Shown here: positions 3,001 through 9,000 of the stretch, in pieces
How the letters are laid out: the number at the start of each line of letters is the position of its first letter
Position numbering within the stretch: the stretch's first letter is position 1
DNA from: Botryllus schlosseri
Taxonomy: Eukaryota
Direction of reading: 5' to 3'
NCBI GenBank assembly: GCA_051294905.1
Contig: CM119372.1
Span: 22,816,001 to 22,880,000, forward strand
Length of the DNA: 64,000 nucleotides
Program-made: the position numbers and the translations under genes
The notes under the pieces: model-generated
The model's input: only the letters and a program-made list of their open reading frames with translations
Database searches by the model: none
What the model was told of the DNA's origin: nothing

Positions 3001-6000
3001 TTTACCTTAAAAATCTTAGTTTTGACCAGATTTTAATCTAACGTATGCAAATTAGGAGTTTTCCCACATAATGTTAGAATTGACTCAAAAAATTGAATAA
3101 AAAAATGTCAAAATTGTTTAGAACCTGCATTTCGTTCGTATCGTAGATTTTGCACTGTCGGTGAACTCATCATTTGACATTTGACAGCTTATAGGCTACT
3201 TAATAGGCCTACCGTTGTAGACGGCCCATTGTCTGCTTATTGTGAATCATAAACATTCAAATGAAAGGAATAGGTTGACATTGTGTTATGCTCAACATAC
3301 CGAAAAATTCCAACTGAAGCAAGACTGCCATTATACGTGATATAATAACTAGGGATGGTGTGAACGTGAGGTTCACGTTCGCGTTCTGTGTGTGAACCTC
3401 GGAAATTTAGAGGTTCACGTTCACAAACGAACCTTGGTAGGTTCTGCACTGTGAACCTTTTTCATATTGCAATTTTCACTTCATTATAACATCTTTGGTT
3501 GAAATTTATTGCATTTCAACTGCGGGCCACTCAATCACACAACATCAAGAGCGAAATACACTACATGTAGGTAGTCAGCGAATGATGCTTATTCAACCAA
3601 TCTATGAAATTGATATCGATGTCTGATGTAAAAAATCTAGCAGGCGTAAGGGGTCAATCTTGATGTCATATGTTTATTGTATCGAAAAAAAATCCGTCCG
3701 ATTGGAGTGTTGGCTACTGTTGTATAACTTGTTGAAGGGGTAATATCGGTAGCAAGTATGGAAACATGTTTTTCACTCTGCACCATATCAACGTAGCAAT
3801 ACTCAGACGCCGAATGCATATTCCCTTGCAAGTCGTCGTCGAAATTGTTGACAAAGCGACGAAGGATATTGATTTTTTGAGATTATTATACCATTTGATT
3901 GCTACAGTTGATACATTTGACGACGTTTAAAAAGTCAGTATGTGCTTCAGCATTGTGGCATTATGTAGATCGAGTCGTCGCTAGGTATTGTGTACATAAA
4001 TATATATCACTTCACTGAAATGTAGGGTTGGAATTAGCAATATGACGCCACGTGACATCACGAGGTTCACGTTCGCGTTCACACAGAACCTTTCAAGAAG
4101 GTTCGCGTTCACACGAACCTGAACCTTTCAGAGGTTCACACCATCCCTAATAATAACTACTGGAATTCTTCATAGGGCCAGATTTCGTTAAAAAAAAGTT
4201 TTTTTGTGTAAAAATTTTGTCAGTTTTTGACCTAACGCTACAATTTTGACAAAATTGACGTGTCAAAAAAAATCGCCATACTTATCACGCTTTTGGAATG
4301 GCAGTGCTTGAATTATTTCTTATGTTCAGTTAAGTGTCAACCATTCTTGTTGTTGTGCTGTGGTGGATGCTTCTTTGCTTTGGTTATGAACAGACGCACG
4401 TTTCACATAAAAATGTACCAGTTTTACTGGGTTCCGACTCCACTGATCTATCCCACTACTCTGTCTGTCAGCTATCTGAGATTGCACGTGCGCATCTCAG
4501 CCTACACAATGCAAGTGGAGGTGTTGATTGAGACGCCTTTGTAGCATGGATTGATTGGTTTTTCCACATATTTCTATGTTTTGCATTACTTATAGTAAGT
4601 AAGTAATAGTAAGTAACAACCGTCACAGTATTGCTAATAAGATTAGGCTATAGAGAAAATGTATATTAAATATCCCTACCAGTACTGCGTTCATCAAGAC
4701 GAATTTTTCCAAATCCGGTCTCATCTCTGATGTATATGCGTATGAAATGTTCCAATCTTATAGTTGTGATGTCAAATTTACGTGTGAGCCTACTCCTGTG
4801 CAAATACTTGTACCTTTTTGTACGTGACGTGTGGTTTTACCTGCGTGTCACCGTCAAACTGCTTCCCAGCACTGCTTGTCTTGGGCTCAAGCTTCTTTCT
4901 GTGGTACGGATCCGTACGGGCCGCCAAAAAACTCCACCTGGACATGCTCCAGCGCGTTTTCAAGGCGCCGATGTCGTTCTTTGACACGACTCCGCTGGGC
5001 AGAATCATTAACCGCTTCAGGTCTGAGAGTTTTGAAAATCAGAGAGCCTTGCGAATAATCCACGTAATTCTCTCGCAATCGCAGCAAGGACGTATATCTT
5101 TGTGACGAGGTCATACCCCGTACCGTTTCCATGTTCTTGTCGACGTTTCTATCGACTATAGCCACATTCGGCGTGATACTTTACGGCGTCCCTATCTTCG
5201 GGGTGGTTATCGTGCCGCTGCTGCTTCTGTATATGCTGATACAGGTTGATATTATGATACAGTCCGATTTGACCAGTAGTAATTGCACATCAAATAGAAC
5301 CATCAAATAAAAGGAACTGCCTTATATCCATGGCTGTGGAGTCAGCTCACCTCCCCACTAATAATATGTTCTTCAGAAAACTCCTACTCCAACATTCCCG
5401 TGAACCTACATTTTCAGTTATTCTTAATATGATATTGGTATGTAGTAGTTTTTGAAGGTCCGCCTACATGGAAAGCTTGATAACTTCTGTAATTGCAACA
5501 GCACTTACTAATAACATTTGTGAACATCTGGTTCGGTTTCAAAGTAATTGAAGTCAGAGTCGGAGCATTTTATCAAGCTCCGACTCCAATGGCTGTTTCA
5601 AAACTTCTGAGACTATGACTCATTCAGAGAAAATTTTACAAAACTCTGACTCCACAGCCCTGGTTGTATCCACGACCCGCCGGGTATTGCTGTCACAAGC
5701 CGCACTCGTTTGAAGTATTCTACACGAGCAACTGAATCAGACGTAGAACTATCTCGGGCTGGTGTTACCACTGATTACGTTTGAGATAATTCTGTTGCAT
5801 GCAGCATATTTCGTGCGAATCCACACCCTTTTCGACAATTCTGCTTGCATGCGCATGGCGTGGCTGGTAGCTGTGCTTGAAACCAACTCCTTTTCTCGCA
5901 AAGGATTATTTGTCGGTTTGGCGGCGGTTGTCTTGTCTTACGGCGTGCTGCAGGCGGCGGCTAGTTTGCATCATGGGATGCTGGCTAACCTGCTGCGGGC

Positions 6001-9000
6001 CCCGATGCAGTTCTACGATCAGACTCCGATTGGCAGGATCATTAACCGGTTCTCTAAAGACGTGGACACGATGGACAATATTTTGCCGAGGTGTGTTGAT
6101 TTTTCACTCTTGTGATGTGAAAGGACAATTCGAAATGAAGCCCGGCCGATATCAGAACTTTGAACCAATGCTGATATAACCGGAGATGGTCAAAGTTGTT
6201 AGCGTTGCTACCCAGGTATAAGTAGAACTAATACGGTACATTTCTACCCGATTGCAATTAGAGATTACAAGATGTTTCAATACTTTTTTGAGTGGAAGTA
6301 GAAATTTAGTATGTATGAAAAGTAAGTAAGCAGTTAATAGGAGGTGGTTGCTTTGGAATATCACAAGATGCATCTTTACGACTAACAAAAAACATCGACT
6401 GATGAGGCTCCGAATAGGCCTAGGTACAGCCTTCTTGAATATATTCAGCAGTACAATAGTAACTGTGAATGGCCAGTTCACCATTTCGCACATAAAACAA
6501 ATGCAAAGATATTCCAAAACTACCTTCTGCTTCTCAAAATTGAAAGTGTAAAATACTAGTAGCTTTGCCTAAAAACTGTTGCATATTTACAATTCGACCG
6601 ACTGGTTGCCTTATTAAATTGTGACTGTTCTCGTTTTCAGAATAATATCGATGTGGCTGTCTTGCATGTACGGTGTGCTGAGCACGGTCGCTGTAATCTG
6701 CTACGCCACACCGTTCTTTACCATCGCTTTCATACCTTTAATGATACTCTATTATTTCGTACAGGTCAGTCGATTTTGTGGTGCTCTTGTAGACATTAAT
6801 ATTCTCTCTGGAACAGCACGCGCTATAATATCTGTCATAATCCTGAAGACTCTTCCCTAACAATACGCGAGTTTCATAATTTTGCATTTTGCATCGCGAC
6901 ACTAGTCTCTAGTCGGCGTTTTGAAATGATTTTTATGCCTTGCCATAATCATGATAAAGAGTATATGTCTGTTAAATAATTATGATTAGTTGCATATTAG
7001 AAAATTGTGTGCTACTCTTTGTTAGGCTTGTTCGCTTTGCCAGCTCAGTGTGGTGTGGTTAGCACTCGTGGTGAACATGATTGTGCAATGTGCAGTTCTG
7101 CACGGTATAATGAGTTCTGTTACCATTTTAAAAGTCATTCAGACATTGTATTTTCAAATCACCATGCTGCGCTGGTAATGATAGAATACACCTTGGTGTA
7201 GCTAGTGGTGACTTGTAGAGCATTTTGCATGCTCCCCAGGACTTGATGTCATTGTAGTAATATACGGCACTATGCATGACCGAGTAATTGTCTGGTCCGT
7301 CACGAAAAGGTTGTCCAACTGTCCATAGTTAATGAAGCGGAGGCTGGTTTGGGTCAGCGCCTAAATTTGTACTACTGGTCAAAATTGGATATGCTGTTAT
7401 CGTTGTTTGCCGTGTCGTAACCGTTTTTGTTTGTGACGCAATAGAGGTTCTATGTGTCCACATCGCGTCAGTTGAAGCGTCTGGAGTCGATTAGTAGATC
7501 GCCGATTTACTCGCACTTTGGGGAATCTGTGACAGGTGATTTCATGATAATATCGCACGCTTTGGTTGATAAATAATGATATTTGTATTATCAGGCGCGA
7601 GCACCATCAGAGCCTACTCCCTACAAAAAAGCTTCATCCTTGAAAATGAAAACAAAGTGGACCGCAATCAGATGGCCTATTATCCGAATATTGTTTCCAA
7701 CAGGTTCGCGGCGTGTGTCTTATTAGTTTGTTGAAATCAACTTCAGGTGTGCCATATCATTTGAGAGACTTGAATTGTGGTTTTAATGTTTGAATGACCC
7801 AGATAAAGTTGTTACGAGCGACACATTGACACATTCTATTTCAATCATCGAATATAGCCCCTAACCCAGGGGTGGGATGTTATATTTCTGACTGGGTCAA
7901 ATGGAAAGCGGAATATAGTGTGACAGGCCCATCCAAAGGTTTCAACTATATTCTTCGGCATAGTAATTTTATTTCTAAGTTTCTTTACAAAATAGATTCC
8001 GAATCAAAATCACAGACCATGTGTAATTCCAACCAAATTTTCGCACCTAAGTCAAGCCCTAACACTAACCTAACCTGTAAGTCTGACGCTAACCTAGTTA
8101 ATGTGAGTCGGATGACCAGCATCACATCAAACTTGAATTGTCACTCGAATGACTATCACCGGTGCTGAACGTTACTCAAATAACTGAACCCAATAAATAC
8201 TTGGAATTATTTGCCACTCTGTCAAACATCATCGACATTGTCATGCGAACGAACGCCATTGTCGATTGTCACTTGGTTCGGCATCTGCACCGTCATTACT
8301 GCGCTTCCATTGTAAACGTGTCTGTCTCCCAGATGGTTGGCGTTGCGTCTGGAGTTTGTGGGAAATTGCATCGTCCTTTTCGCCGCCATCTTTGCTGTCG
8401 CTGCCAGGGACACCATCAGCGGCGGTGTCGTGGGGTTGTCCGTATCCTATGCTTTGCAGGTAACTCGGCGTTTACGCGCCTGTCGAGTGCCGGAACACGT
8501 TTAGCAGCTTTCCCCATCTTCCTAGATCACCCAAACCCTGAATTGGATGGTGAGACAGACCAGCGAACTGGAGACAAACATCGTGGCCGTTGAGAGGGTG
8601 AAAGAATACTCCGAGGTCGAAGAGGAGGTGAGATATTTTGTTGTCTTTCTTCGATGTTAGTTGCAGACGGTCGGCATCAATCTGGTTACCTGAGGTGATC
8701 GACATCGAAGTACTTCTACTTTTTCCAGAGTACTCGGGTAGGTTTTGCCTGCTGGTACTACTTGAGTGATTGTTTCAAGACTGTTTCCACTTCCACTTGA
8801 CAGCTTTTAGGCAAAACTGCTTATTTTGATGTTTTGGATTTCATAAAGTAAAAAGTAGTTTTGCGTCACTTTTACCACTGTAATTCTCATAAAAACCACA
8901 TGGATAGCCATGTACAGGCCGTGTTATTTTTGGCATTTCAGGAGCCAGATGCCAAAACTGCCAAAAATAAAAATTTGAAAATGCCCAAAATAAGCAATTT

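What the first reader, a model, noticed from the sequence alone, without database searches (positions are those of the whole stretch)
4870..6764. Mutually exclusive two-exon cassettes swap TM13-TM15 of an MRP1/ABCC1 transporter
Seen: the segment from the second half of TM13 to the end of TM15 is encoded twice in tandem, as A (4870-5020 + 5085-5244) and B (5904-6090 + 6641-6764). Each totals exactly 311 nt, enters in phase 1, exits in phase 0, is stop-free, and the two 104-aa peptides align without gaps. They are highly diverged except around [22 protein letters not shown]. Including both or neither breaks the frame, so a functional mRNA needs exactly one. Known: TM14/TM15 of human MRP1 contain substrate-specificity determinants (e.g. 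E1089), and mutually exclusive single exons occur in Drosophila dMRP and C. elegans mrp-1. Inference: one gene produces two pumps with different substrate pockets, and the switched unit is a two-exon block needing coordinated splicing, which is much rarer than single-exon mutual exclusion.
Basis: partly seen in the sequence, partly recalled or inferred. Interest (0 to 1): 0.88.

Follow-up and report, generated by a model that had tools for sequence, protein, structure and literature searches.

The report
Mutually exclusive ABCC transporter exon cassettes
A tunicate MRP/ABCC pump gene carries two alternative versions of one membrane segment, and public RNA data show mRNAs with one or the other; it is a real splice switch, but of a kind already known in MRP genes of flies and worms and annotated in fish ABCC3.

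Summary
Cassettes A (4870-5020 + 5085-5244) and B (5904-6090 + 6641-6764) are each 311 nt, open and GT-AG bounded. They are homologous (47/104 residues), and frame logic allows exactly one.

Spliced contigs from two public RNA runs hold all six predicted junctions. One contig is exactly upstream exon + A + downstream exon. B has about 3-5 times the depth of A. No A2>B1 junction was listed. A lies in contigs of 14 RNA runs from four studies.

The window comes from a tunicate. The switch is not new in kind. The same 104-residue unit is tandemly repeated in teleost ABCC3, where NCBI isoforms X1 and X2 differ by it, and in amphioxus, a snail and insects. Published work describes MRP mutually exclusive arrays across phyla.

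A groups with the first fish ABCC3 cassette and is ABCC3-like in TM14-15. B and the second fish cassette are ABCC2-like. This suggests an old chordate pair, but it is not proven (AU p = 0.10).

In the fish each cassette is one exon, so the two-exon form is best read as derived.

A 28-bp long-range stem links the intron just after A2 to the intron just before the next constant exon. It is a candidate device for looping out B. Different substrate pockets remain untested.

The parts
2826..2912 (+). Constant exon before the switch (ends ...GLAQ plus 1 carried base)
   Evidence: Translation. Spliced joints 2662>2826, 2912>4870 and 2912>5904 in RNA contigs.
4870..5020 (+). Cassette A, first exon (A1, 151 nt): TM13 and the start of the conserved cytoplasmic-loop motif
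   Evidence: ABC_membrane, E = 1.3e-9. Joints 2912>4870 and 5020>5085 in runs X1 and X2.
5021..5084 (+). 64-nt intron inside cassette A (phase 2). Absent from the homologous fish exon. Retained in the main A contig of run X7.
   Evidence: The fold is unremarkable.
5085..5244 (+). Cassette A, second exon (A2, 160 nt): end of the loop, TM14 and TM15. ABCC3-like.
   Evidence: Best solved relative is human ABCC3 at 31.6 bits, against ABCC2 21 and MRP1 19. Joint 5244>7445 in an X2 contig and in 2 raw reads of X23.
5254..5281 (+). Candidate selector arm, 10-37 nt after the A2 donor
   Evidence: Pairs with 7370-7403: 28 bp, dG -33 kcal/mol. The 14-nt perfect core is unique in the window. Intron-pair shuffles give P about 0.003.
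5904..6090 (+). Cassette B, first exon (B1, 187 nt): TM13 and the conserved cytoplasmic loop
   Evidence: ABC_membrane, E = 7.7e-10. Aligns to human MRP1 1035-1088. Joints 2912>5904 and 6090>6641.
6091..6640 (+). 550-nt intron inside cassette B (phase 2), 36 nt further into the cassette than the intron in A. Absent from the homologous fish exon.
6641..6764 (+). Cassette B, second exon (B2, 124 nt): TM14 and TM15. ABCC2-like.
   Evidence: Best solved relative is human ABCC2 at 34.4 bits, against ABCC3 19 and MRP1 14.5. Joint 6764>7445.
7370..7403 (+). Candidate docking arm, 42-75 nt before the acceptor of the next constant exon
7445..7535 (+). Constant exon after the switch ([15 protein letters not shown]...)
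   Evidence: Joints 5244>7445, 6764>7445 and 7535>7595.

Best explanation
This is a frame-enforced pair of mutually exclusive cassettes in the second membrane domain of a long-MRP (ABCC1/2/3-like) transporter gene of a tunicate. Shown: the two cassettes are homologous, intact and equal in length and phase. Spliced mRNAs contain upstream exon + A1 + A2 + downstream exon, or upstream exon + B1 + B2 + downstream exon. B was the more abundant form in the two runs that could be compared. Inferred: the pair descends from one tandem duplication of a single 311-nt exon in an early chordate, the same event that left two alternative exons in teleost ABCC3. A is the chordate 'ABCC3-type' copy, and B is the older-looking 'ABCC2-type' copy. 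Each copy later gained its own intron in the tunicate lineage. These inner introns are ordinary constitutive introns, so the pair behaves as a two-way switch. Mechanism, inferred: B is the default choice. When A is spliced in, a 28-bp stem forms between the intron just after A2 and the intron just before the next constant exon. The stem loops out B and brings the A2 donor next to the 7445 acceptor. Transcripts with both cassettes or neither are out of frame and would be removed by nonsense-mediated decay. Functional result, inferred: two pumps that share the coupling-loop motif and the nucleotide-binding domains but differ at about two thirds of the positions in TM13, TM14 and TM15. They may therefore differ in substrate range or kinetics.
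For: Anatomy and frame logic. Homology. Transcripts. In runs X1 and X2 the joints were 2912>4870 (depth 12.7 / 27.1), 5020>5085 (12.7 / 27.1), 2912>5904 (66.2 / 69), 6090>6641 (66.2 / 76.1; also X7 at 4.0) and 6764>7445 (94.6 / 76.1). Joint 5244>7445 was seen in X2 (27.1) and in 2 raw reads of X23. X2 record 8 is a 366-nt contig equal to 28 nt upstream + 311 nt A + 27 nt downstream. A is held in contigs of 14 RNA runs from 4 studies. Wider occurrence: gene models with 2-6 tandem copies in teleost ABCC3, sturgeon, amphioxus, Nucella and insects. Trematomus isoforms X1 and X2 differ exactly by the two cassettes. Old origin: winA groups with the first fish ABCC3 cassette (support 94/82) and with amphioxus copies 1-3 (85/92). 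A and these copies share S8 and Y55. A2 and fish cassette 1 score best on human ABCC3; B2 and fish cassette 2 score best on human ABCC2. The order is the same, A-type first, and the exon length (311 nt) and phase are the same. Derived introns: both fish cassettes are uninterrupted exons. Stem: P about 0.003; 14-mer expected 0.00 times, found only at the two arms. Host lineage: (best named glucosylceramidase hits are ascidians).
Against: Contig depth is a poor measure of isoform ratio, and contigs drop rare forms. The absence of A+B, skipped or A1>B2 transcripts is therefore not shown, and 3 joints were not displayed. In run X1 the A contig runs on unspliced past the A2 donor. In X7 the A contig keeps the frame-breaking 64-nt intron. 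Part of the A-containing RNA may therefore be unproductive. The old origin is favoured but not proven. Forcing winA + winB into one clade costs 18 log-likelihood units, but AU p = 0.10. The first half of A is not ABCC3-like. winB is unresolved in the tree. The stem could not be checked for conservation, because no close relative's locus was obtained. A second, competing selector is weak. The fish locus shows no comparable complementarity. No functional data exist. The residues aligned to MRP1 E1089, D1084 and M1093 do not differ between A and B.
Confidence: 0.8

Rival explanations
1. Only B makes a working pump. A is a leaky or regulatory alternative whose inclusion mostly yields unproductive RNA, so there is in effect one protein.
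For: A has the lower contig depth, about 16% and 26% of A+B in X1 and X2. The X1 A contig is unspliced after A2, and the X7 A contig retains the 64-nt intron. A has the longer branch in the tree (0.81 against 0.52).
Against: A is fully open despite about 50% DNA divergence from B. It keeps the family's conserved motif and stays 55-57% identical to the fish ABCC3 cassette. It is completely and correctly spliced in X2, and the 5244>7445 joint appears in raw reads of X23. It is present in 14 RNA runs.
Confidence: 0.12
2. The duplication happened within tunicates and is independent of the fish ABCC3 pair. The resemblance of A to ABCC3 and of B to ABCC2 is convergence or noise in a short segment.
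For: AU test p = 0.10 for a winA + winB clade. The alignment has only 104 columns. A1 scores worst on ABCC3 among the long MRPs. Published work, cited in PMC6071210 and PMC7434440, stresses independent MRP exon duplications in different phyla.
Against: The best tree places winA with fish cassette 1 and amphioxus copies 1-3. They share S8 and Y55. Order, exon length and phase are the same. The ABCC3-like/ABCC2-like split is parallel in tunicate and fish.
Confidence: 0.3
3. The 28-bp complementarity plays no part in cassette choice. Exclusivity rests only on splice-site competition plus decay of out-of-frame products, or the stem serves something else, such as back-splicing of B.
For: Only one clear pair was found and there is no convincing competing selector. 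No conservation test was possible. The fish locus has nothing similar. The energy test on 100-nt windows is only moderately significant (6 of 500 shuffles).
Against: The 14-nt core occurs nowhere else in 64 kb. The pair is the only significant one among 10 intron pairs. Both arms lie within 80 nt of exactly the two splice sites that must be joined to make the A form. This matches the downstream-docking layout described for insect 14-3-3zeta, Mhc and MRP1 (PMC6071210). No back-splice joint was listed.
Confidence: 0.45
4. The tandem copies are an assembly artefact.
For: None found.
Against: The copies are 50% identical in DNA, not near-identical. Both are transcribed and spliced to the same flanking exons. 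Further runs of unrecorded library type, probably DNA, hold the region.
Confidence: 0.01

Closest known systems
Teleost ABCC3 (cMOAT2) alternative exon pair, as annotated by NCBI (e.g. Trematomus bernacchii isoforms X1 and X2)
   Same: Same position in the protein, same 311-nt unit, same phases and same order (ABCC3-like copy first, ABCC2-like copy second). One copy per annotated isoform.
   Different: In the fish each alternative is a single exon (311 and 314 nt). Here each is split by its own intron, at different places. I found no paper on the fish pair in the held library.
Drosophila melanogaster MRP (dMRP) variable-exon cluster and other insect MRP arrays
   Same: Tandem homologous exons in the same part of TMD2, chosen one at a time. 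Docking site in the intron downstream of the cluster (PMC6071210, citing Yue et al. 2017). Insect gene models with many copies appear.
   Different: Insects have up to 8 shorter units (about 65-70 residues) that lack TM15, and several competing stems. Here there are two 104-residue units and one candidate stem.
Caenorhabditis elegans mrp-1 exons 13A-13D
   Same: Mutually exclusive homologous exons of an MRP gene, confirmed by experiment (PMC4165533).
   Different: Four exons of 156 nt whose length is a multiple of three, so exclusivity there is not enforced by the frame. The duplication is regarded as independent (PMC7434440, PMC9741552).
Docking-site/selector long-range RNA pairing (Dscam, 14-3-3zeta, Mhc and MRP1 of insects)
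   Same: An intronic element next to a variable exon is complementary to an element in the intron beside the constant exon. Pairing would loop out the unused alternative (PMC6071210).
   Different: Only one selector is evident. Competition, conservation and function are untested. The organism is a chordate.

Membership tests
ABCC / MRP-type ABC exporter, second membrane domain | Match to the ABC transporter transmembrane region profile at the expected positions | tested here: met
   PF00664: A1 E = 1.3e-9 (profile 57-104) and B1 E = 7.7e-10 (60-115), both above the curated cut-off. A2 E = 1.1e-3 (106-158), below the cut-off. B2 gave no hit.
ABCC / MRP-type ABC exporter, second membrane domain | Closest solved relatives are ABCC proteins, aligned collinearly, followed by an NBD2 with Walker A | tested here: met
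   hits are ABCC1-5, 8, 9, YCF1 and CFTR only, apart from three zero-stretch ubiquitin-fusion rows. Downstream exons encode [15 protein letters not shown] and [13 protein letters not shown].
Mutually exclusive exons from tandem exon duplication | Adjacent alternatives are homologous, with the same length and the same entry and exit phase | tested here: met
   311 nt each, phase 1 in and phase 0 out, 47/104 identity without gaps. E = 1e-17 and 4e-10.
Mutually exclusive exons from tandem exon duplication | Mature transcripts exist with each alternative joined to the same flanking exons | tested here: met
   All six junctions are in spliced RNA contigs of X1 and X2. One contig spans upstream exon, A and downstream exon.
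Mutually exclusive exons from tandem exon duplication | Transcripts with both alternatives or with none are absent or rare | tested here: inconclusive
   No 5244>5904 or 2912>7445 joint was listed, but contigs drop rare forms, 3 joints were not shown, and raw-read depth in X23 was under 1.
Mutually exclusive exons from tandem exon duplication | Each alternative is a single exon (the usual definition) | tested here: not met
   A and B each carry an internal intron (64 and 550 nt) at different positions. The fish homologues are single exons.
Docking-site/selector RNA structure controlling mutually exclusive splicing | Significant intronic complementarity between a site next to a variable exon and a site next to the constant exon | tested here: met
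   28 bp, dG -33 kcal/mol. 14-nt core unique in the window. P about 0.003 against shuffles.
Docking-site/selector RNA structure controlling mutually exclusive splicing | Two or more selectors compete for one docking site | tested here: inconclusive
   A second pairing of the docking region with 6286-6309 is 79% complementary and heavily bulged (dG -23), so I do not find it convincing. The B-intron/downstream-intron pair as a whole is no better than shuffles.
Docking-site/selector RNA structure controlling mutually exclusive splicing | Conservation or covariation of the arms in related species, and an effect on splicing | not testable with these tools
   No locus of a related tunicate could be fetched. 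The fish locus has no comparable pair.
Shared chordate A-type/B-type cassette pair (orthology with teleost ABCC3 exons) | A groups with fish cassette 1 rather than with B | tested here: inconclusive
   The best tree groups winA with fish cassette 1 (94/82) and amphioxus copies 1-3 (85/92). The alternative winA + winB clade is not rejected (AU p = 0.10).

The most novel reading that the evidence does not exclude
The A/B pair is the ancestral chordate condition of the long-MRP gene. After the vertebrate genome duplications the two splice forms were parcelled out to paralogues: ABCC3 kept the A-type, ABCC2 kept the B-type, and teleost ABCC3 still has both. The tunicate keeps the undivided switch and picks the upstream cassette with a looping-out RNA stem. 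That would be a docking/selector-like device in a non-arthropod MRP gene.
Probability: 0.3. Interest if true: 0.6.

Novelty: new member of a known kind. Interest (0 to 1): 0.42.

Why it matters
The case is a clean, transcript-backed instance of one ABC exporter gene making two versions of TM13-15, the part of the pump that helps line the transport path. Its main value is comparative. The pair may be as old as chordates, and vertebrate ABCC2 and ABCC3 may carry the two versions separately. If so, the tunicate gene is a natural experiment on what this segment contributes to substrate choice. It would also be a concrete example of splice forms being turned into separate genes. Two smaller points follow. 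It shows two independent intron insertions inside sister exons, which bears on intron gain in tunicates. It also offers a simple two-arm RNA stem that can be tested in a minigene.

Tried and rejected
- **Close tunicate relatives:** the last protein search, with exon A2, found nothing. Exact look-ups of the window's DNAJC9-like protein, amphioxus P0151, Nucella P0169 and P0187 and fish isoform X2 were not on record. I therefore have no dN/dS and no conservation test for the stem.
- **Representative search with B1:** it gave no sequence above 55% identity to B over the whole cassette.
- **Whole-intron duplex folding:** The next gave meaningless global duplexes. I replaced it with longest-complement shuffles and local folding.
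- **Other intron pairs:** none showed complementarity that survives the ten comparisons; the next best was the A intron against the A2-B1 intron (P = 0.04 uncorrected). The donor and acceptor windows that would loop out A scored no better than shuffles.
- **Tardigrade locus:** it has other intron positions and says nothing about the chordate ancestor.
- **Rfam:** no match in 1-16000. The 64-nt intron has no unusual fold.
- **Yue et al. 2017 (RNA Biol 14:1399):** the paper is not held, so I could not check whether it already lists tunicate or fish cases.
- **Assembly artefact and U12-type or steric exclusion:** rejected. All sites are GT-AG, and the A2-B1 intron is 659 nt.

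
Full report
**The sequence**

On the + strand, an exon ending at 2912 (…GLAQ plus one carried base) is followed by two units. Unit A is 4870-5020 + 5085-5244. Unit B is 5904-6090 + 6641-6764. 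The next constant exon begins at 7445 ([15 protein letters not shown]…). All boundaries have AG acceptors and GT donors.

A is 151 + 160 = 311 nt and B is 187 + 124 = 311 nt. Both are open in the frame set by the flanking exons. Each gives 104 residues, and the two align without gaps at 47/104 identities (157/311 nt). Including both units, or neither, shifts the frame and soon gives stops.

The homology is not chance. BLASTP gives E = 1e-17 for A1 vs B1 and E = 4e-10 for A2 vs B2. A1, B1 and A2 hit the Pfam ABC transporter membrane profile at matching positions. A1 and B1 score above the cut-off, A2 scores below it, and B2 gave no hit.

Both inner introns are phase 2, so an A1>B2 hybrid would stay in frame while losing 12 residues.

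**Transcripts**

I laid four public runs on 2400-7750. Depths are given as X1 / X2:

| Junction | Depth (X1 / X2) | Other runs |
|---|---|---|
| 2912>4870 | 12.7 / 27.1 | |
| 5020>5085 | 12.7 / 27.1 | |
| 5244>7445 | none / 27.1 | 2 raw reads with different starts in X23 |
| 2912>5904 | 66.2 / 69 | |
| 6090>6641 | 66.2 / 76.1 | X7 at 4.0 |
| 6764>7445 | 94.6 / 76.1 | |

- X2 record 8 is a 366-nt contig made of 28 nt of the upstream exon, the 311 nt of A and 27 nt of the downstream exon. It is a complete A-only path.
- The B path is the sister branch, with about 3-5 times the depth.
- No A2>B1 joint was listed.

Caveats:
- Contig depth is only a rough guide, and contigs drop rare variants.
- Three joints were not displayed.
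- The raw-read run had depth below 1 on this gene.
- In X1 the A contig runs on past the A2 donor into the intron.
- In X7 the main A contig keeps the 64-nt inner intron, which breaks the frame. Some A-containing RNA is therefore incompletely spliced.

A second look-up shows the A region in contigs of 14 RNA runs from four studies. It is also almost complete in six runs of unrecorded library type, probably DNA. The cassette is therefore real in the genome and widely transcribed.

**Place in the protein**

Alignments to solved structures put cassette residue k at human MRP1 residue 1026 + k, that is 1027-1130. By the UniProt topology as I recall it (my own knowledge), this covers TM13, the cytoplasmic loop carrying the conserved TPxGRIxNRFSKD motif, TM14 and TM15.

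Identity between A and B by segment:

| Segment | Identical residues |
|---|---|
| TM13 | 7/20 |
| Cytoplasmic loop | 25/43 |
| TM14 | 8/21 |
| TM15 | 7/20 |

The membrane helices vary and the coupling loop is kept. The residues aligned to MRP1 D1084, E1089 and M1093 are the same in A and B (D, R and M). The importance of those three positions is from my memory of the MRP1 literature. Whether the two forms transport different things is untested.

**Where the window comes from**

An intronless glucosylceramidase gene in the window (25194-26741) has ascidians as its best named relatives: Styela clava 63%, Phallusia 57%, Ciona 55%. The host is therefore a tunicate. The constant exons of the ABCC gene are 59-62% identical to the best-scoring fish ABCC3 proteins and about 65% identical to an amphioxus MRP.

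**The same switch elsewhere**

A search of protein representatives with B1 returned gene models that read through two to six tandem copies of this unit. A follow-up search and mapping showed:
- two copies in teleost ABCC3;
- two in a sturgeon model;
- four full and two partial copies in an amphioxus model;
- three in the snail Nucella;
- many shorter copies in insects.

In Trematomus bernacchii, NCBI isoform X2 carries the first copy and isoform X1 carries the second. In its genomic locus the copies are single exons of 311 and 314 nt, lying between the same flanking exons and in the same phases as here.

The literature already describes mutually exclusive MRP exons:
- Four 156-nt exons in C. 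elegans mrp-1 (PMC4165533).
- An eight-exon cluster in Drosophila MRP, with downstream docking sites (PMC6071210).
- A survey by Yue et al. 2017 that reports independent duplications in several phyla. It is cited in PMC6071210, PMC7434440 and PMC9741552. I could not read it.

I found nothing in the held library on the fish ABCC3 pair or on tunicates.

**Age of the pair**

In a maximum-likelihood tree of 45 cassettes, A groups with the first fish ABCC3 cassette (support 94/82) and then with amphioxus copies 1-3 (85/92). B sits unresolved among cassettes of protostomes and others.

A, the first fish cassette, the sturgeon copies and amphioxus copies 1-3 share S8 and Y55, giving SKD(I/V)Y. These residues are absent from B and from the other cassettes, which have SKDVDT.

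Bit scores against solved human proteins:

| Query | ABCC3 | ABCC2 | MRP1 |
|---|---|---|---|
| TM14-15 half of A (A2) | 31.6 | 21 | 19 |
| TM14-15 half of B (B2) | 19 | 34.4 | 14.5 |
| Fish cassette 1 | 116 | about 80 | about 80 |
| Fish cassette 2 | 62 | 72-75 | 67-68 |

The order is the same in tunicate, fish and amphioxus, with the A-type first.

This points to one duplication before the chordate subphyla split, and possibly to ABCC2 and ABCC3 each keeping one form. It is not proven:
- A forced A+B clade is 18 log-likelihood units worse, but AU p = 0.10.
- The first half of A is not ABCC3-like.
- The alignment has only 104 columns.

**The two-exon form**

The fish homologues are uninterrupted, and the tunicate pieces add up to the same 311 nt. 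The inner introns are 64 nt after nucleotide 151 of A, and 550 nt after nucleotide 187 of B. They are best read as insertions after the duplication.

This agrees with an earlier first-stage note on the same stretch (s1-291573). I checked it against only one outgroup locus. A tardigrade locus has other intron positions and does not help.

The inner introns look like ordinary constitutive introns. The 'two-exon block' is a secondary feature of an ordinary two-way switch.

**How one cassette is chosen**

Frame logic alone would remove A+B and skipped products by nonsense-mediated decay. That is an inference.

There is also a candidate RNA device. Bases 5254-5281 lie 10-37 nt after the A2 donor. 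They pair with 7370-7403, which lies 42-75 nt before the 7445 acceptor. The stem has 28 base pairs (10 GC, 15 AU, 3 GU) and dG about -33 kcal/mol.

Evidence that this is not chance:
- Its 14-nt perfect core occurs nowhere else in the 64 kb, and none was expected in shuffles.
- Among ten intron pairs, this is the only one with complementarity that survives the ten comparisons (P about 0.003; the next best was 0.04).
- A window-based energy test is more modest, with 6 of 500 shuffles as good.

The stem would loop out B and bring together exactly the two splice sites joined in the A form. That is the layout described for downstream docking sites in insect 14-3-3zeta, Mhc and MRP1 (PMC6071210).

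Points against:
- There is no convincing second selector.
- Nothing comparable exists in the fish locus.
- No related tunicate sequence was available to test conservation.

I rate the stem's role at about even odds.

**Verdict**

The finding is a new member of a known kind, not a new kind of system.

The points worth following up are the likely antiquity of the pair, the ABCC3-like/ABCC2-like identity of the two forms, the two separate intron insertions and the testable stem.

Noticed in passing
window 3345-4154: Element with terminal inverted repeats (3345-3365 / 4134-4154) inside the intron before cassette A. RNA-run contig depth over it is in the thousands, with many variant copies, so it belongs to a very abundant, transcribed repeat family.
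   Followed up: partly
window 25194-26741: Intronless 516-aa glucosylceramidase (GBA-like) gene. Its best named relatives are ascidian proteins (63-55% identity), which identifies the host as a tunicate.
   Followed up: partly
window 19512-20279: Intronless 256-aa J-domain (DNAJC9-like) open reading frame. The exact product is not on record in the gene-position index.
   Followed up: partly
window 4914-5192 (run X7): In one 2022 RNA run the main contig over cassette A keeps the 64-nt inner intron, which breaks the frame. In the 2015 and 2021 runs that were laid (X1, X2) it is spliced out. This may reflect regulated or inefficient removal of this mini-intron.
   Followed up: no
window 5245-5618 (run X1): The A-containing contig of run X1 is spliced on its 5' side but reads through the A2 donor into the intron. 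This suggests slow removal of the 2.2-kb intron that contains cassette B.
   Followed up: no
window 5323-5345 / 5646-5668: A 23-nt inverted repeat (87% complementary, 300 nt apart) within the A2-B1 intron. It may be a small hairpin-forming repeat element.
   Followed up: no
P0151 (Branchiostoma floridae gene model), residues 1060-1687: The amphioxus MRP model reads through four full and two partial copies of the cassette. The first three are nearly identical A-type copies and the later ones are B-like. This looks like a larger array of the same switch.
   Followed up: partly
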